Part shown: one piece after another, positions 2,144-61,800 of the stretch
Layout: every line of letters begins with the position of its first letter
Numbering within the stretch: position 1 is the first letter of the stretch
Origin: Octopus sinensis
Lineage: Eukaryota
Direction: 5' to 3'
Assembly: GCF_006345805.1 (NCBI RefSeq)
Contig: NC_043009.1
Span: 63,364,001-63,428,000 of the forward strand
DNA length: 64,000 bases
Made by a program: the position numbers and the translations under genes
The notes under the pieces: generated by a model
Told to the model about the DNA's origin: nothing
Seen by the model: the letters and a program-made list of their open reading frames with translations, nothing else
Database searches by the model: none

Positions 2144-2860
2144 TCAATATTCTTCTAGCCATCGCTCATCGTTTCTTTTTAACCAAATCCAGTGGCTAGC
2201 CTTTTCCACTGTTGTTTGGATATCGGTCACGGTGGTATTTACCTTACGATGTGTTAGGCCTAACGATAACAACAGTCGTCTCACACTGTGTCCAACAAAC
2301 CCTCTACATCCAACATTGATTGGAAAATGCTCCGCTTTCCAGCCTGCATCTTCACAGTCCTCGAGGAGATTTACATAACGATCAATCTTTCGAGCCCAAG
2401 CGGCGTCCATGTTATCTTCATGAGAAACAGTTAATTCGACTAGATTCACAACTTTCTTTCCTTCACACCACATTAAAATGTCCGTTTTTTTTTCGTAATT
2501 GGGATAGGAAAAAGTCCCTGGCACCCTGATAAATCAACAGCACCTCCCAATTGCCGTTCCACTTTTCATCTCTCACAGGAAGTTTGTTGTTCTTCTTGAA
2601 ACGGATCCGCTGTCCTGAGCGTACGAAGGTAATGAAATCTCTAGTTCGTACTTCCAGCGGTTACTTTTTTTTCACTGTTGTTGAAATCAATTTGGTTCTT
2701 TTTAGCATTGAAGATAATCTTAAGAGCCAGGTTGTGTCTTCATGTATACCTGTTCAATGCTAGTGAACAGTTGGAAAGAATATGCTTCAGTGTTCCTACC
2801 TTTCCGCATTTGCATTCTCTGAGACGTTCCATCTTACTAGATTTGCAGGTGACGGCAAAA
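2144..2860 (-). mobile_element. HERO-like RLE non-LTR retrotransposon, 3' remnant (CCHC knuckle plus restriction-like endonuclease)
   Basis: Minus-strand pieces: CKCGKVGTLKHILSNCSLALNRYT*RHN, then ITFVRSG, then TDILMW...LVELTVSHED...RKIDRY...GWKAEHFPINVGCRGF...EKASHWIWLKR. Contains a stop and frameshifts. Confidence 0.85.
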
Positions 2861-23207: not shown

Positions 23208-23889
23208 TAACATGTATACATATATACGCACACAAACAAGCACTCACACACACTCACACACACACATACACACACACTCAAACACACCCTTCAATACATT
23301 AATTTTTGTGGGTTTTTTTTTAAATTGCTAGTGCTTACGTATTCACATATTCTTCAAAATATTGTTTCATATACTCAACATTTGCCAGTTCCTCATAATA
23401 AATTATTGCGCACTTGGGCATCGCAGCTCCCCAGTTTTTGACAATGTAATTAATGAAAAATGAAAAAAAAATGGTTTCCTGCTCCGAGTGTGAGTGTTTT
23501 ATTCTTTCACATTTGATTGGCCAACTGAAAGGTCAGAGAAATGAGTGACTTGACGAATTGTTATCAGCAGGTTCGTGGCGAAGATTAGTTCGCAGCTAGA
23601 TTTATAAACATTGCAAAAATTGGAAATGATGACAATGAGATGACGGTGAGGTCGCCAACGACAAGAACAAGAAGAAAACAACACCACTACCACCACCACC
23701 ACCAACAGCAATGACAGCAACAACAACAACAACTGCAAGCTATCAGCAAGTATAGTTACTCAGTAGTATGACCTGCGACAAGGATCACTGCGAGTGTCCA
23801 TGTTAAACTGCTGACATCATAGCGCTGAAAGTATTGTATAACGAACCTGATACCAATGAAATATATACACACTTGCAAGCTAAGTATAT

Positions 23890-24124
23890 CGCACACACGC
23901 ACACCACACACACACACACACACACACATCCATCCATCCATACATAAATACATACATACATACATACATGCATACGTACATGCATACGTACATGCATACG
24001 TACATACATACATACATACATACATACATACATACATACATACATACATACACACATACATACATACATACATACATACATACATACATACATACATACA
24101 CACATACATACATACATACATACA

Positions 24125-24155
<31 letters not shown>

Positions 24156-24320
24156 GCAACTATATGCATGAGAATACATGTATAAAACATACAAATCTGC
24201 ACATACATACATACATACATACATACATACATACACACATATATACATACATACATACATACATACATACATACATACATACATACATACATACATACAT
24301 ACATACGTACGTATGTATGT
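23890..24320. repeat. (CATA)n tetranucleotide arrays
   Basis: Directly visible. Confidence 0.95.
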
Positions 24321-24471
24321 GAATTTATATGCTTTGTTTAAGACTTGGTACAACAATTGTTCCAATCTACATGTGGCGTTATTCACTGCTAGATTTGTTG
24401 TAAGCAAGAAACAAATTAAACTCGGTAAAGTATGAAAGCAACACACATACACACACACGCACGTATGCATA

Positions 24472-29384: not shown

Positions 29385-29622
29385 TACGTAATATCAGACC
29401 CACTGCGTAGCAACTTGGGCAAGTGTCTTCTACTATAGCTTCGGGCCGACCAAGCCTTGCGACTGGATTTATGCCCCCGTTAACTGAGCGGTTCGGCAAA
29501 AGCGACGAATAGAATAAATACCAGGCTTTAAAAAAAGTGAGTACTGGGGTCGATTCGCTCGACTAAAATTGTCCAAGGCGGTGCCCCAGCATGGCCGCAA
29601 TCCAATGACTGAAAGAAGTAAC
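29385..29622 (+). mobile_element. SINE type B, internally deleted
   Basis: CTTGGGCAAGTGTCTTC core and GGTGCCCCAGCATGGCC...GACTGAAA tail. Confidence 0.8.
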
Positions 29623-29683
29623 AGATTATAACATATATATATATATATATATATAATATATTATATATATATAGTATATATAG

Positions 29684-32414: not shown

Positions 32415-32454
32415 TCTGAAGCTTTCGCGTTACGTCTAAGAATATTCTCCTGAT

Positions 32455-32790
32455 TTACTTGTTTCAGTCATTGGACTGCGGCCATGCTGTGGCACCGCCT
32501 TGAACGGTTTAGTCGAACGTACCGATCCCATTATCCTTTATTTTTTTAAAGCCTGTTACTTATTCTGTCAAGCTCTTATCTCGAACAGCTAGGTTACGAG
32601 TTCGTAAATAAATCAACAGCAGCTGTCATACGACAGGCTTCTTTCAGTTTCCATCAGCCAAACACTCTCACAAGTCTTTGGTCGGCCCAGGGCTATAGTG
32701 GAAGACACTTGCCCAAGATGCTACGCAGTGGTACTGAACCCAGAGCGATGTGGTTGCGAAGCAAACTTCTTGTCACACTGCCACCCCTGC
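32455..32790 (-). mobile_element. SINE type B, diverged
   Basis: Reverse complement of head, core and tail. Confidence 0.8.
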
Positions 32791-33267
32791 ACTTAAACCG
32801 AATCTTAGAAATGTGTAAAAATAAAATAAAATAAACCACTCGGTTTACATACATGCATACATACATACGTACATACATACATACATACATACATACATAC
32901 ATACATACATACATACATACATACATACGTACATACATACATACATACATACATACATACATACATACGTACATACATACATACATACATACATACATAC
33001 ATACATACATGCATGCATACATACATACATACATACATACATACATACATACATACATACATACATACATACATACATACATACATACTTACATGCATGC
33101 ATGCATATATATATATATACAGTAAGTTTAACATCCAACATATATCTTCATATTTATTTTTATTTTTCTTCATTTTTATTCCCTTTCCACCTCCTATATC
33201 TCTCCCTTTCCAATATAACTTCTTACATTGAACTATATTATTTCCTTCTATTTAACTCTCTCATACC

Positions 33268-34169: not shown

Positions 34170-34377
34170 CTGTGTTTGTCGCCCCCCCCCAACATCGCTT
34201 GACAACCGATGGTGGTGTGTCTACGTCCCCGTAACTTAGCAGTTCGGCAAAAAAAAGACCGATAGAAGAAGTACTAGGCTTACAAAGAATAAGTCCTGGG
34301 GTCGATTTGCTCGACTAAAGGCAGTGCTCCAGCATGACCGCAGTCAAATGACTGAAACAAGTAAAAGAGTAAAAGAG
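33968..34377 (+). mobile_element. tRNA-headed CORE-like SINE type B, full length
   Basis: Head GGCGCAGGAGTGGCTGTGTGGTAAG...GGTTC, CORE-like CACCTTAGGCAAGTG, internal (TA)/(TG) tract, and tail GACTGAAACAAGTAAAAGAGTAAAAGAG. Confidence 0.9.
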
Positions 34378-49009: not shown

Positions 49010-49428
49010 ACTCTCTTTTACTCTTTTACTTGTTTCAGTCATGTGACTGCGGCCATGCTGGAGCACCGCCTTTAGTCGAGCAAATCGACCCCAGGACTTA
49101 TTCTTTGTAAGTCTAGTACTTATTCTATCGGTCTCTTTTGCCGAATCGCTAAGTTACGGGGACGTAAACAGACCAACGTCGGTTGTCAAGCGATGGTGGT
49201 GGTGGTGGGACAAACACAGACACACAAACATATACACACACATACATATGTATATATACATATATACGACGGGCTTCTTTCAGTTTCCATCTACCATATC
49301 CAATCACAAGGCTTTGGTCGGCCCGAGGCTATAGTAGGAGACACTTGCCCAAGGTGCCACGCAGTGGGACTGAACCCGGAACCATGTGGTTGCTAAGCAA
49401 GCTACTTACCACACAGCCACTTCTACGC
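49010..49428 (-). mobile_element. SINE type B, full length
   Basis: Reverse complement of the 33968-34377 sequence. Confidence 0.9.
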
Positions 49429-52909: not shown

Positions 52910-53667
52910 AACCCTAACCCTAACCAACACATTAAACAAACGATTGATTCTTTAATTGATTAGTTGGTTTGATACTTAACAAATTGACTAATAATACAGA
53001 AGAGGAATTGAACTGTGTGTGTGTGTGTGTGTGTTATTATTATTGGCGCAATGACTCTCCCAAAACGCAACTGAACTTGTTTCAAGACTCGAATTAACAT
53101 CAAGAACCTTGCAAGCCAAACACAAAAATAAAATAAACTTCCTAAAGTACATGTCATTCCACGTTTCCTGAAATGTGTTTCCTTTGAGCAAAAATGGTTT
53201 ATTTTTGTTTAAAAGTAAACCGAATGCGTTTTCACAGGCAAAACGGAACTGAAAATCTAAACTAAAAAGTGCAGCACTTCACTAATTGCAAACACATGTA
53301 TAATTACTCCAGTCAAGGTTTCCCTCCCATTTTAATAAACCCTCGTTACACTTTCTACGGGGTTAAAAACCTGAATAGCTAATTGATTAAATATTTCGTT
53401 TATTCTTTTACTTGTTTCACTCATTTGACTGCGGCTATGCTGCAGCACCGCCTTTAGTCAAGCATATCAACCCCAGGACTTATTCTTTGTAAGCCTAGTA
53501 CTTATTCTATTGTTTTTTTGCCGAAACGTTAAGTAATGGGGACGTAAACACACCAACATCGGTTATCAAGCGATGTTGGTGGGGGGGGAACAAACACAGA
53601 CACACAAATATATACACACACATACATATATATGTGTGTATGTATGTTATATATATATATATGTATG

Positions 53668-53807: not shown

Positions 53808-53860
53808 GAGCTTCTACAGGACTAGAACTGTTTCATTCAAGAGAAATCTTCAGGAAGCTC
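53808..53860 (-). ncRNA. Type I hammerhead ribozyme motif (mirror copy)
   Basis: Exact reverse complement of 53864-53916. Confidence 0.7.
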
Positions 53861-53863
53861 AGG

Positions 53864-53916
53864 GAGCTTCCTGAAGATTTCTCTTGAATGAAACAGTTCT
53901 AGTCCTGTAGAAGCTC
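53864..53916 (+). ncRNA. Type I hammerhead ribozyme motif
   Basis: GAGCTTC-CTGAAGA-T TTC TCTT GAA T-GAA-ACAG TTCTAGTC CTGT-A-GAAGCTC. 7-bp stem I and GUA at 53907-53909. Confidence 0.7.
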
Positions 53917-54207: not shown

Positions 54208-54325
54208 GGAGACGCAATGGCCCAGTGGTTAGGGTAGCTGCTCGCGGTCGTAGGATCGCGGTTTCGATTCCCAGACCGGGAATTGTGAGTGTATATTGAG
54301 CGAAGACACCTAAAGCTCCACGAGC
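54208..54325 (+). mobile_element. SINE type C 5' fragment
   Basis: Head matches the other type C copies. Confidence 0.8.
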
Positions 54326-54551
54326 CTTGATCTGAGATCGTGTGTTGGAATGAAAACAATTGCAGCATTGGAAGGTGTTTATAAGCCATTTAAGAAACAC
54401 ACGAAAACTAGCACGGGATTTTGTCAGTGAACAGGTCACGGTCTCAAAGCAACGAAAATATTTTGACAAATTAAATTTAAATGTTGAAGTGAATCTAACG
54501 GTTTTTGTGTGTTTCTTAAAAATATTTGTCGTCTTATCATAAACTTATCAG

Positions 54552-57539: not shown

Positions 57540-57929
57540 GGCGTAGGAGTGGCTGTGTGGTAAGTAGCTTGCTTACCAACCACATGGTTCCTAGTTCAGT
57601 TCTACTGCGTGGAACCTTGGGCAAGTATCTTCTACTATAGCCTTGGGCCGACCAAAGCCTTGTGAGTGGATTTGGTAGACGGAAACTGAAAGAAGCCCGT
57701 CCTATGTGTGTATATGTTTGTGTGTCTGTGTTTGTCCCACCACCACATCGCTTGACAACCGATGGTGGTGTTTTTACGTCCCCGTAACTAAGCGGTTCGG
57801 CAAAAGACACCGACAGAATAAGTACTAGGCTTGCAAAGAATAAGTCCTGGGGTCGATTTGCTCGACTAGATGCGGTGCTCCAGCATGGCCACAGTCAAAT
57901 GACTGAAACAAGTAAAAGAGTAAAAGAGT
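57540..57929 (+). mobile_element. SINE type B, full length
   Basis: Head, core and tail as in 33968-34377. Confidence 0.9.
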
Positions 57930-58135
57930 ACACGTGTATATGTGTGTGTGTGTGTGTGTGTACGTGATAAGAAAATGAGATGACAAAGGAATAAGCGATT
58001 ATCTTATGTACTTCATTAGCTTACAGATGTTTCTGCTATAAGATGCAATGGAGTCCTCATCATAGATGAGTACCTAAGTAACACTCTATAGCATCATCGG
58101 AGACGCGAATATCAAATACTATTTATTTCGGAAAA

Positions 58136-58198
<63 letters not shown>

Positions 58199-58199
<1 letters not shown>

Positions 58200-58396
58200 C
58201 CTTAAATCCTTAAAAATGTTTCGGCCCGAATGCTGTGGCCATGCTGGGGCAGCACCGTTGTAACAAAGTGTAACGCTTACAGCACCTAGGTTTCCCAAGC
58301 GGTCACTCATCTAAGTACTAACTAGACTCGACGTTGCTGAAATTCGCTGATCGGACGAGAACTGGTGCTTTCAACGTGATGTGGCCGGCCGTAAGC
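58199..58396 (-). mobile_element. 5S rRNA-derived retroposon (candidate SINE3): full 5S head plus CR1-like tail
   Basis: 58396-58275 reads GCTTACGGCC...CACGTTGAAAGCACCAGTTCTCGTCCGATC...GTTAGTACTTAGATGAGTGACCGCTTGGGAAACCTAGGTGCTGTAAGC. It is followed by GGTGCTGCCCCAGCATGGCCACAGCATTCGGGCCGAAACATTTTTAAGGATTTAAGGA. Confidence 0.85.
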
Positions 58397-58413
58397 ATTA
58401 CCATGAACCAGGC

Positions 58414-58458
<45 letters not shown>

Positions 58459-58717
58459 CGTGTGTGTGTGTATATATAAAATACAAAAAGGGACAACAGA
58501 ACATCCAGATAGACGATACAAAGAAAACAAGGTGGGTCATTCGGAGTTTTCTTTCTTCAGTCAAGCACCAGATTATCCTCGCAATTTCGGCTGATTATTC
58601 TTGAGATTGCTCCAATCTGGTCAGCTCCAAGGCCAGATGGATGTCTATCTGGATGTTTTGTTGTCCCTTTTTGTATCACCTAGCTGTCCGGATGTTCTGC
58701 GTTCTTGTCCCATTTTG

Positions 58718-58760
<43 letters not shown>

Positions 58761-58993: not shown

Positions 58994-59930
58994 ATATATA
59001 ATTCTATTTAAAACAAATACGAACATGGCAAACTTAACCATTTTCCGTTGATTGGAAAAGGGAAGAATGGCCTAAATCAATTTTCGAACCTTATTGGGAT
59101 CTCATCAGTGGTGTTTTTCATCACTTAACTAATCCCAAATAAATAAGCAACCAATCTGTTTATACAAAAAAGTACAGTAGATCCAGAGAAGAGGAGCTAC
59201 TGATTTGCACCTTATTTTTATTTAACACTTTATATAATATCAGTCCCCGGCAACGGAGAGGCCACTCCACAGAGTGACAAGGTATGATATAACATGTAGA
59301 CCTCTGTAGAAGAGATACAAGCATGGCAAATTTAACCATTTCTTCGTAGACTGAGAAATATATAGTAACTAATGAAATGTTTCGCAAACATGACGAAAAT
59401 ATTTCCCCTGTGCAAAACAATTTGCGAGAGTGCTCAATAAAATTTTCGAGTTTAAAGCGGTTATATCATGCTATGATAAGTCTACTACTAATACGAAGAT
59501 GCTCTTTAAAAAATGTAATCAACTGAATATTGAAATAACTACGTCATACATTCCATATCTTTTTCATACATGATTTTATTTCTAGTAGTCAAACGTTCAT
59601 GGTCGCAAACGGACACGTGGTCGTTTCACAGCTTATGTGTGCCACGGAGTAGAAACCATTAAAAAATTAAGAACACAATTACTCTTAATTTGCTTTCTAG
59701 TAAGAAACTCTACTCATTGAAATATTAAAAGAGGATGTAGAACTAACCTCCAGAAATGAGCTGTTTTAGTAATTAGAGAGAGAAATCTTTCGGAATTATA
59801 ACATAAACACTTTTATTATTGCCCTAAATCGTCCTCAGACGCGATACGTTTTGAAAAGATATTTTCATTATAATTTTGAAATATTTATCCCTCTAATTAC
59901 TATAACAGGTTATTCCTGTTAGTTTTCAGT

Positions 59931-59931
<1 letters not shown>

Positions 59932-60018
<87 letters not shown>

Positions 60019-60568
60019 TACACACATACATACACACATACATACATACATACATACATACATACATACATACATACATACATACATACACACATACATA
60101 CGTATATACATACATACATGCATACAGACACACATACACACACACATACATACACACACACATACACATACATACATACATACATACATACATACATACA
60201 TACACACATGCATGCATACATACATACATACATACATACATACATACATACACACATACATACATACATACATACATACGTATATACATACATACATGCA
60301 TACATACATACATATATATATACATACATACATACATGCATACATACATACGTATATACATACATACATACATACATACATACACACATACATACATACA
60401 GACATACATACATACATACGTATATACATACATAAATACATACATACATACATACATACATACGTATATACATACATACATACATACATATATACATACA
60501 TACATACATACATGCATACATACAACGTATATACATACATACATACATACACACATACATACATACAG

Positions 60569-60601
<33 letters not shown>

Positions 60602-60906
60602 CATACATACGTATATACATACATACATACATACATACATGCATACATACATATATACATACATACATACATACATACATACATACGTATATACATACAT
60701 ACATACATACATACATACGTATATACATACATACATACATACATACACACATACATACATACACACATACATACATACATACATACATACATACATACAT
60801 ACACACATACATACACACATACATACATACATACATACATACACACATACATACATACATACATACATACATACATACATACATACACACATACATACGT
60901 ACATAC
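59932..60906. repeat. ~1-kb compound (CA)n/(CATA)n array
   Basis: Directly visible. Source of the 190-360 aa pseudo-ORFs. Confidence 0.97.
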
Positions 60907-61371
60907 ATTATAACTGAAAGGCTCCTCCGATTTCCCGTGCTCCGAGTTACTCGCTTACGATCATCTGCTGGTAAACCGAGCTTGGTTTTCTTTTGAATAT
61001 TCACTGTCTGAATATTTTTTGAAATACGAAATGAAAGGTTGAAGGAAACGCTTATCCTTATGTCCTTTGGTTTAAAAACCTTTGTGAACTACACCTACGA
61101 AAACAGATGCTTCAAGCTTACGCTTTGGATGTCATTTCTGGCTCCCGCGGTAATATTGTTATAACCGTCATAAACATAAAATGTAATGAGAGTCGCCTAT
61201 AGAGGACATTGCCTGACGACTCTACCCCCACGACAATTTAATTTCAATGAATCAATACACGAAGGAGGCGGATGAACGAAAGGGTTTTATGGTGGTGTCT
61301 GTTTGAAGTATGTCTGACCATACCAAGATTAAAACATTTTTTCACTAGGTTTGTCGAAATATTTATGCTAT

Positions 61372-61800
61372 AGGCGCAGGAGTGGCTGTGTGGTAAGTGG
61401 CTTGCTAAGCAACCACATGGTTCCGGGTTCAGTCCCACTGCGTGGCATCTTGGGCAAGTGTCTTCTGCTATAGCCCCGGGCCGACCAATGCCTTGTGAGT
61501 GGATTTGGTAGACGGAAACTGGAAGAAGCCTGTCGTATATATGTCTATATATATGTGTGTGTGTATGTATGTATGTGTTTGTGTGTCTGTGTTTGTCCCC
61601 CCCCCCAACATCGCTTGACAGCCGATGTTGGTGTGTTTACGTCCCCGCCACTTAGCGGTTCGGCAAAAGAGACCGATAGAATAAGTACTGGGCTTGCAAA
61701 GAATAAGTCCCGGGGTCGATTTGCTCGACTAAAGGCGGTGCTCCAGCATGGCCGCAGTCAAATGACTGAAACAAGTAAAAGAGTAAAAGAGTAAAGAGTA
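61372..61800 (+). mobile_element. SINE type B, full length
   Basis: Head, core and tail intact. Confidence 0.9.

What the first reader, a model, noticed from the sequence alone, without database searches (positions are those of the whole stretch)
58199..58396. Candidate 5S-rRNA-derived SINE (SINE3) with a CR1-type tail
Seen: a complete 122-nt 5S-like head starting at the mature 5' end, with helix I intact (GCTTACGGC/GCTGTAAGC), a 3-nt insertion and scattered substitutions. It has no T4+ terminator at the 5S 3' end, a ~20-nt linker, the LINE-type GGTGC..CATGGCC..GCCGAAAC tail, the first T5 run, and then TTAAGGA repeats abutting (TA)n. Known: 5S-derived SINEs are rare compared with tRNA-SINEs and use the internal type 1 Pol III promoter. 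Inference: Pol III would read through the tail and stop at T5, giving a ~185-nt RNA competent for CR1-mediated retroposition. I do not know of such a family from cephalopods, but I cannot search.
Basis: partly seen in the sequence, partly recalled or inferred. Interest (0 to 1): 0.8.

Follow-up and report, generated by a model that had tools for sequence, protein, structure and literature searches.

The report
Lone 5S-headed SINE-like retrocopy in octopus
A single, decayed copy of a 5S ribosomal RNA fused to the LINE-type tail that octopus SINEs use sits in a TA microsatellite; it has the build of a 5S-derived SINE, but I could not test whether it belongs to a repeated family.

Summary
On the minus strand, 58396..58275 is a full-length 5S rRNA-like sequence (Rfam RF00001, 66.3 bits, E 9.6e-12) and the only one in the window. 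It has no T4+ run at its 3' end. About 10 nt downstream begins a ~65-nt tail that ends in two perfect TTTAAGGA units.

The tail matches, in sequence and in spacing, the 3' module of a repeat present seven times in this window. That repeat is an Octopus element: its translations hit O. bimaculoides proteins, and about 15 copies lie in 45 kb of O. bimaculoides chromosome.

So the head-plus-LINE-type-tail build is real, and the whole unit looks like one retroposed insertion into a TA tract.

Not shown:
- Any second copy. There is none in the 109 kb of octopus DNA I could reach, and no tool here searches an octopus genome.
- That the tail is CR1-type. No partner LINE was found.
- That this copy is active. 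Helix III has three broken pairs. The T5 run lies before the terminal repeats. A 17-nt leader precedes 5S position +1.

Best reading, about 0.5: a dead member of a 5S-headed SINE lineage. The main rival, about 0.3, is a one-off template-switch chimera. Either way it is a known kind of element in a phylum where the literature I read lists none. Interest is modest.

The parts
58414..58439 (.). Upstream (TA)n tract, continued by (TG)n; candidate 5' copy of a target-site duplication
   Evidence: TA tracts cover only 4% of the window, yet both ends of the unit lie at TA tracts.
58397..58413 (-). 17-nt leader GCCTGGTTCATGGTAAT between the TA tract and 5S position +1; unexplained
   Evidence: No similar sequence elsewhere in the window.
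58275..58396 (-). 5S rRNA-derived head, 122 nt, decayed; helix I intact, GGCC duplicated at 58383-58390
   Evidence: Rfam RF00001, 66.3 bits, E 9.6e-12, model positions 1-120. It is the only 5S in the window. Non-standard pairs are marked in helices III and IV.
58257..58274 (-). Junction/linker GTTACACTTTGTTACAAC, containing the imperfect direct repeat GTTACA(C)..GTTACA(A). Its 3' half already aligns with other tails.
58218..58256 (-). LINE-type tail core: GGTGCTG-CCC-CAGCAT hairpin, GGCC, ACAG, 10 nt, then GAAAC
   Evidence: Homologous to the tails of 7 window repeats and about 11 repeats in L112. The spacing matches theirs: CAG + 10 nt + GAAAC + 3 nt + two 8-mers. Fold.
58212..58216 (-). First T run of 4 or more (T5); likely Pol III stop, located before the terminal repeats
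58199..58214 (-). Two perfect TTTAAGGA units, the 3' terminal tandem repeat
   Evidence: the only occurrence in the window, none in L112.
58140..58198 (.). Downstream (TA)n tract abutting the 3' end; candidate 3' copy of the target-site duplication or target microsatellite

Best explanation
This is one retroposed, now inactive copy of a composite RNA. A complete 5S rRNA-like head is joined, through about 10 nt, to a ~65-nt LINE-type 3' module. That module is of the kind carried by the CCAGCATGGCC-tailed SINE-like repeats of Octopus.

Inferred mechanism: the reverse transcriptase of the LINE that recognises this tail primed on the tail at a nick in a TA microsatellite. It copied through the 5S part and left the unit flanked by TA tracts. 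The composite itself most likely arose when that enzyme switched template from a tail-bearing RNA to 5S rRNA, which is the accepted route by which 5S-headed SINEs are born.

I judge it somewhat more likely than not that the composite then amplified, so that this is a member of a low- or moderate-copy 5S-headed SINE lineage. The copy in the window is dead: helix III is broken, conserved positions are changed, and a T5 lies ahead of the terminal repeats.

Shown: the head, the tail homology, the absence of a terminator at the head's end, the flanking TA tracts, and the host genus. Inferred: retroposition, the template switch, and family status.
For: - The head is a full-length 5S match, E 9.6e-12, and is solitary, so this is not a 5S array with its normal spacer.
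- The tail core occurs 7 times against 0.02 expected, and the other six are in tails of one repeat family. Alignments beat 2000 of 2000 shuffles.
- The layout is identical: CAG + 10 nt + GAAAC + 3 nt + two 8-nt units.
- The family tail folds into two hairpins, z = -3.5. The first hairpin is kept in the 5S element.
- Head and tail are in the same orientation and 10-18 nt apart.
- There is no T4+ between the head and the T5.
- Both ends of the unit lie at TA tracts, although TA tracts cover 4% of the window. A MITE has entered the same microsatellite block, so this block does receive insertions.
- The host is Octopus.
- Size-biased sampling (inference): an element met in a single 64-kb window is more likely to come from a many-copy class than from a unique event.
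Against: - There is no second copy of the head, the junction or the TTTAAGGA tail in 64 kb plus 44.7 kb of octopus DNA.
- The 17-nt leader does not fit a Pol III start at 5S +1.
- Relative to the Rfam consensus, and to my recollection of animal 5S sequences, the internal promoter region (about positions 50-97) is no better kept than the first 50 nt. Published SINE3 families show the opposite pattern (PMC10886601).
- The second tail hairpin is poor and the tail as a whole is not unusually stable (z = +0.4).
- The papers I read on 5S-derived SINEs and octopus repeats report no cephalopod 5S SINE.
Confidence: 0.5

Rival explanations
1. One-off chimeric retrocopy. During a single retroposition event the LINE enzyme copied about 70 nt of a tail-bearing LINE or SINE RNA. 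It then jumped to a mature 5S rRNA and copied that to its 5' end. The product never amplified.
For: - Only one copy is seen.
- The full-length 5S, followed by GTT (possibly its terminal U residues with one change), fits a mature 5S rRNA as acceptor.
- The stuttered junction GTTACAC TTT GTTACAAC looks like template jumping.
- The promoter region shows no sign of selection.
- The leader could be a second jump or added nucleotides.
- Chimeras of small RNAs with LINE 3' parts are established for other LINEs (Buzdin et al., as cited in PMC4758252 and PMC4824008).
Against: - Such events are rare per genome, so meeting one in a single 64-kb window is a priori unlikely (inference).
- The tail differs from that of the dominant local repeat, so the donor would be a rarer element that is not itself seen in 109 kb.
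Confidence: 0.3
2. 5'-truncated fragment of a longer element, either a LINE 3' UTR or a longer composite SINE, in which the 5S-like segment is internal. The 17-nt leader would be the last part of the upstream sequence that was copied.
For: It explains the leader directly. 5' truncation is the rule for LINE-mediated copies (established knowledge).
Against: No LINE-like coding sequence or related repeat lies upstream. I know of no LINE with a complete 5S in its 3' UTR. The truncation would have to fall just 17 nt before the 5S start.
Confidence: 0.08
3. Two unrelated events: a dispersed 5S pseudogene (orphon), with a truncated SINE or LINE tail later inserted just after it, perhaps at its T-rich terminator.
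For: Tail-bearing repeats are dense here, about one per 8 kb. The upstream (TA)n at -18 to -43 could be a native TATA-like 5S upstream element (inference).
Against: It needs the same orientation, a gap of at most 18 nt, and a rare tail variant. My rough estimate of the chance is about 0.2%. There is no duplication flanking the tail alone. The TA tracts bracket the whole unit, not the tail.
Confidence: 0.07
4. A functional variant 5S rRNA gene with an unusual spacer.
For: Full length, intact helix I, nine CpG sites retained.
Against: - Three non-standard pairs in helix III and one in helix IV.
- A 4-nt insertion in loop A.
- The conserved UAAGC is changed to UCAGC.
- No terminator at the 3' end.
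- A single copy, not in an array.
Confidence: 0.02

Closest known systems
SINE3 / 5S rRNA-derived SINEs: zebrafish SINE3, HaSE3 and other lepidopteran SINE3, fruit-bat MEG, springhare Ped-1, CoeSINE5, python SINE-1_Pmo
   Same: A 5S-derived head at the 5' end, loss of the 5S terminator, a LINE-derived 3' tail ending in short tandem units, and total length near 200 nt.
   Different: Family status is not shown. The promoter boxes are not better conserved than the rest of the head. A 17-nt leader lies ahead of +1. There is no body domain. The host phylum, Mollusca, is not among the groups listed for 5S SINEs in a 2024 review: reptiles, insects, fish, mammals (PMC10946416).
Chimeric retrogenes made by LINE template switching (small RNA such as U6 or 5S joined to a LINE, SINE or mRNA 3' part; Buzdin et al.)
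   Same: A full-length small RNA at the 5' side and a 5'-truncated retroelement 3' end at the other, inserted as one unit; single copy so far.
   Different: Those were described for L1-type enzymes with poly(A) tails. Here the tail is a structured, repeat-ended module of a 'stringent' type.
The CCAGCATGGCC-tailed SINE-like repeat of Octopus (7 copies in this window, about 15 in L112)
   Same: Same 3' module layout and core motif, and presumably the same or a sister LINE partner.
   Different: The 5' two-thirds are unrelated. The hairpin-2 sequence differs, as does the terminal unit: TTTAAGGA versus TAAAAGAG.

Membership tests
SINE3 (5S rRNA-derived SINE) | 5' head derived from 5S rRNA | tested here: met
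   Rfam RF00001, 66.3 bits, E 9.6e-12, model positions 1-120.
SINE3 (5S rRNA-derived SINE) | Internal type 1 Pol III promoter (box A, intermediate element, box C) conserved | tested here: inconclusive
   The boxes are recognisable. Against the Rfam consensus and Xenopus numbering (from memory) there are changes at positions 51, 54, 65, 67, 70, 81, 86 and 95. The 81/95 pair also occurs in Drosophila 5S, so some of these may be native. The host's own 5S sequence was not obtainable.
SINE3 (5S rRNA-derived SINE) | No Pol III terminator between head and tail | tested here: met
   The first T4+ run is the T5 at element positions 181-185.
SINE3 (5S rRNA-derived SINE) | 3' tail shared with a LINE | tested here: inconclusive
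   The tail is homologous to the tails of resident SINE-like repeats. No LINE with this 3' end was found in 109 kb.
SINE3 (5S rRNA-derived SINE) | Many dispersed copies sharing the same head-tail junction | not testable with these tools
   No octopus genome can be searched by DNA here. There is one copy in the window and none in L112. The collection scans hold no octopus DNA. The protein-space search is uninformative: the control found only 12 ORFs for a repeat present about once per 3-9 kb of the octopus DNA read here.
SINE3 (5S rRNA-derived SINE) | Retroposition hallmarks (target-site duplication) | tested here: inconclusive
   TA tracts flank the unit on both sides. A duplication made of TA repeats cannot be measured, and it would include the 17-nt leader.
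CR1-mobilised SINE | Tail homologous to the 3' end of a CR1-clade LINE | not tested
   No LINE sequence was available. The only indications are the 8-nt terminal repeat and a hairpin, which are not exclusive to CR1. The octopus LINE paper read names an RTE-clade element only.
Template-switch chimeric retrogene | Full-length small RNA fused to a 5'-truncated retroelement 3' end, present once | tested here: inconclusive
   The structure fits. Uniqueness in the genome could not be tested.
Functional 5S rRNA gene | Canonical helices, conserved loops, terminator, tandem array | tested here: not met
   Four non-standard pairs, a 4-nt insertion, no terminator, and a solitary position.

The most novel reading that the evidence does not exclude
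Octopods carry an amplifying 5S rRNA-headed SINE family, the first in Mollusca. It would have arisen by putting a 5S head on the same LINE tail module that drives the dominant octopus SINE-like repeats. That would make it a clear case of head swapping on a shared tail.
Probability: 0.45. Interest if true: 0.45.

Novelty: new member of a known kind. Interest (0 to 1): 0.3.

Why it matters
5S-headed SINEs are rare and have arisen independently only a few times. [quoted passage not shown] A cephalopod family would add a phylum. Because it shares its tail module with the main octopus repeats, it would also give a simple system for asking how new SINE heads are captured by a LINE's enzyme.

If it is a single chimera, it is still direct evidence that this octopus LINE enzyme switches templates onto cellular RNAs. 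In either case it is not a new kind of element.

Tried and rejected
- **Second copy in the window.** BLASTN at word size 7 and a permissive Rfam scan found none.
- **Exact 22-mer of the variant 5S 3' end** in metagenome and prokaryote genome collections: 0 hits.
- **Degenerate tail pattern in three collections.** It returned only single chance matches in bacterial contigs, and nothing extended beyond the pattern.
- **Six-frame translation of the junction against 5.8 billion proteins:** no hit at E<=10. The control, using the abundant repeat, found only 12 proteins, so this negative says nothing about families of ordinary size.
- **More octopus DNA.** Only one protein (P0050) could be placed on a genome, giving 44.7 kb. 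Two others were not on record, nor was a window ORF.
- **Octopus transcript FASTA in a paper's supplement.** No 5S or tail-specific strings were found beyond one chance 10-mer.
- **Literature search for a cephalopod or mollusc 5S SINE, or an octopus 5S sequence:** nothing found.
- **Minimum-free-energy folding of the head and of the whole element.** It was uninformative, with z near 0. The Rfam alignment was used instead.
- **Rejected readings:** normal 5S spacer (there is no array), functional 5S gene, and chance juxtaposition.

Full report
**What is there**

The finding lies on the minus strand. Read 5' to 3' on that strand, the region contains, in order:

- (CA)n(TA)n, ending at 58414.
- A 17-nt unique leader, GCCTGGTTCATGGTAAT (58413-58397).
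- A 122-nt 5S rRNA-like sequence (58396-58275).
- An 18-nt linker, GTTACACTTTGTTACAAC (58274-58257).
- A 39-nt tail core, GGTGCTGCCCCAGCATGGCCACAGCATTCGGGCCGAAAC (58256-58218).
- ATT.
- Two perfect TTTAAGGA units (58214-58199).
- About 60 nt of (TA)n (58198-58140).

**The head**

Rfam's 5S model matches 58389-58274 (-) over its full length at 66.3 bits (gathering score 38), E 9.6e-12. It is the only family above threshold. A permissive scan at E<=1 found no further 5S-like sequence, only microsatellite artefacts. ARAGORN found no tRNA genes.

Helix I (GCTTACGGC / GCTGTAAGC) is fully paired. The head is nevertheless not a working 5S:
- GGCC is tandemly duplicated in loop A (58390-58383).
- The Rfam alignment marks three non-standard pairs in helix III and one in helix IV.
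- The conserved UAAGC reads UCAGC.

Several changes fall in the internal promoter region, at positions 51, 54, 65, 67, 70, 81, 86 and 95 in Xenopus numbering (from memory). The 81/95 pair also exists in Drosophila 5S, so some of these may be native to the host. I could not obtain the host's own 5S sequence to tell native differences from decay.

T runs in the element are T3, T3, T5 and T3. There is no terminator at the 5S end, and the first T4+ run is at element positions 181-185.

**The tail**

The window holds seven copies of a ~215-nt SINE-like repeat. Its 3' end reads GGCGGTGCTCCAGCATGGCCGCAGTCAAATGACTGAAACAAG(TAAAAGAG)n.

- The core CCAGCATGGCCRCA occurs 7 times in the window against 0.02 expected. 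Six occurrences are in those tails and one is in the 5S element.
- Local alignments of the 5S element's tail to three tail variants beat all 2000 shuffles. They also extend into the "linker": GTTACAACGGTGC against GTTCAAGGCGGTGC.
- The layout is the same to the base. After the core CAG come 10 nt, then GAAAC, then 3 nt, then two 8-nt units.
- The family tail folds into two hairpins (z = -3.5). The 5S element keeps the first hairpin (GGUGCUG/CAGCAU) but has a weak second one, and its tail as a whole is not unusually stable (z = +0.4). One T-to-C change, CTGAAAC to CCGAAAC, would account for part of that weakness (inference).

So the tail is a diverged member of the same tail superfamily, not a chance match. 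No element ending in TTTAAGGA repeats occurs elsewhere in the window or in L112.

**The host**

Six-frame translation of the abundant repeat hits 12 proteins. One of them, P0050, maps to O. bimaculoides chromosome CM046608.1. The 44.7-kb locus fetched there (L112) carries about 15 copies of the same repeat and a 94% copy of a tRNA-headed SINE that is also in the window. The window is therefore from Octopus, either O. bimaculoides or a close relative. L112 has no 5S-like sequence.

**One insertion or two?**

TA tracts cover 4.05% of the window, and 7.5% of positions lie within 20 nt of one. Yet the 3' end of the unit abuts a TA tract directly, and the 5' side reaches one after 17 nt. A 196-bp MITE with 34-nt inverted ends (58481-58676) sits in the same microsatellite block.

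The simplest reading is that a TA/TG microsatellite received the whole leader-5S-tail unit as one insertion, with TA repeats as target or target-site duplication. That favours retroposition of a composite RNA over a 5S pseudogene that was later hit by a tail fragment.

It also leaves the leader unexplained, because a type 1 Pol III transcript should start at 5S +1. The leader could be:
- flanking DNA, if the element landed at the edge of a TA tract with little or no duplication;
- the product of a further template jump;
- a sign that the parent RNA was longer.

**Family or one-off?**

- The junction is unique in the window.
- The metagenome, prokaryote-genome and viral collections contain no octopus DNA. 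An exact 22-mer found nothing. A degenerate tail pattern that should hit this very frequent repeat gave only isolated chance matches in bacterial contigs.
- A six-frame protein search with the junction found nothing at E<=10. The positive control shows that the protein collection holds only about a dozen ORFs derived from the abundant repeat, so that negative carries no weight.

My weighing is therefore indirect.

For a family:
- An element met in one random 64-kb window is more likely to belong to a many-copy class.
- The build is exactly that of known 5S SINEs.

For a one-off:
- No second copy in 109 kb.
- A stuttered junction (GTTACAC TTT GTTACAAC).
- A possible mature 5S 3' end (AAGC-GTT).
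- No sign that the promoter is better kept than the rest, contrary to published SINE3 families (PMC10886601).

I put the family reading at about 0.5 and a single chimera at about 0.3. The rest is split between a truncated longer element and a two-step origin.

- "CR1-type" is not established. No LINE was found, and the 8-nt terminal repeat and hairpin are only suggestive. The octopus LINE study I read describes an RTE-clade element and does not mention CR1 (PMC9115989).
- "Competent ~185-nt RNA" is doubtful for this copy. Termination at the T5 would strip both terminal units. LINE enzymes that recognise a specific 3' tail, such as the eel UnaL2 system (Kajikawa and Okada 2002, cited), also depend on those units, by my recollection of that work. 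The head is also decayed.

**Comparison with what is known**

The nearest class is SINE3, the 5S-derived SINEs. A 2024 review lists these from reptiles, insects, fish and mammals (PMC10946416). The SINE papers I read on molluscs and cephalopods mention only tRNA-headed families there. The next nearest class is the template-switch chimeric retrogene. Whichever applies, this is a known kind of element. If a family exists, it is a new member in a new phylum, though it may already sit in Repbase or Dfam, which I could not search.

**Verdict**

Interest is modest (0.3). A single genome-wide BLAST would settle the open question.

Noticed in passing
window 58481-58676: A 196-bp MITE with 34-nt terminal inverted repeats (97% complementary), lying in the same TA/TG microsatellite block as the 5S element. 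An extra partial copy of its right end is at 58702-58720.
   Followed up: partly
window 55858-55478 (-), 15028-14648 (-), 38594-38419 (-), 54208-54327 (+), 29990-29820 (-), 7445-7324 (-), 21166-21098 (-); L112 21599-21962: A ~380-nt tRNA-headed SINE with clear box A (TGGCCCAGTGGTTAGGG) and box B (GGTTTCGATTCCC). Two window copies are 96.6% identical, so it is young. It ends in ...CGTAACCGACGGAGTGCC, a different tail from the CCAGCATGGCC family. Neither ARAGORN nor Rfam called the heads.
   Followed up: partly
window 57730-57935, 61591-61793, 49013-49215, 34174-34377, 53396-53595, 29468-29631, 32454-32628: Seven copies of a ~215-nt SINE-like repeat. It has a GT-rich 5' end, no obvious tRNA head, a two-hairpin CCAGCATGGCCRCAG tail and (TAAAAGAG)n. 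Two copies belong to a distinct subfamily. Exonised copies occur in O. bimaculoides protein models.
   Followed up: partly
window 2144-2524 (-): A 126-aa ORF resembling the C-terminal endonuclease-like end of a retrotransposon protein. Best database relatives are only 47-72% identical, are mostly unnamed marine metagenome proteins, and include one from Clytia hemisphaerica.
   Followed up: partly
window 53818-53906: A near-perfect palindrome that scores below threshold for mir-3199 on both strands (67 bits against a gathering score of 100). It is probably an inverted repeat rather than a microRNA.
   Followed up: no
window 23756-24470, 32693-33173, 59919-61004: Long arrays of a TG/TA-rich short repeat that create spurious open reading frames (MYVCMYVC...) of up to 361 aa and many sub-threshold mir-297 and mir-466 matches.
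   Followed up: no
window 58397-58413 (-): The first 8 nt of the leader, GCCTGGTT, equal positions 66-73 of vertebrate-type 5S rRNA (from memory). The chance of this is roughly 2%. It may be a trace of a second template jump, or coincidence.
   Followed up: no
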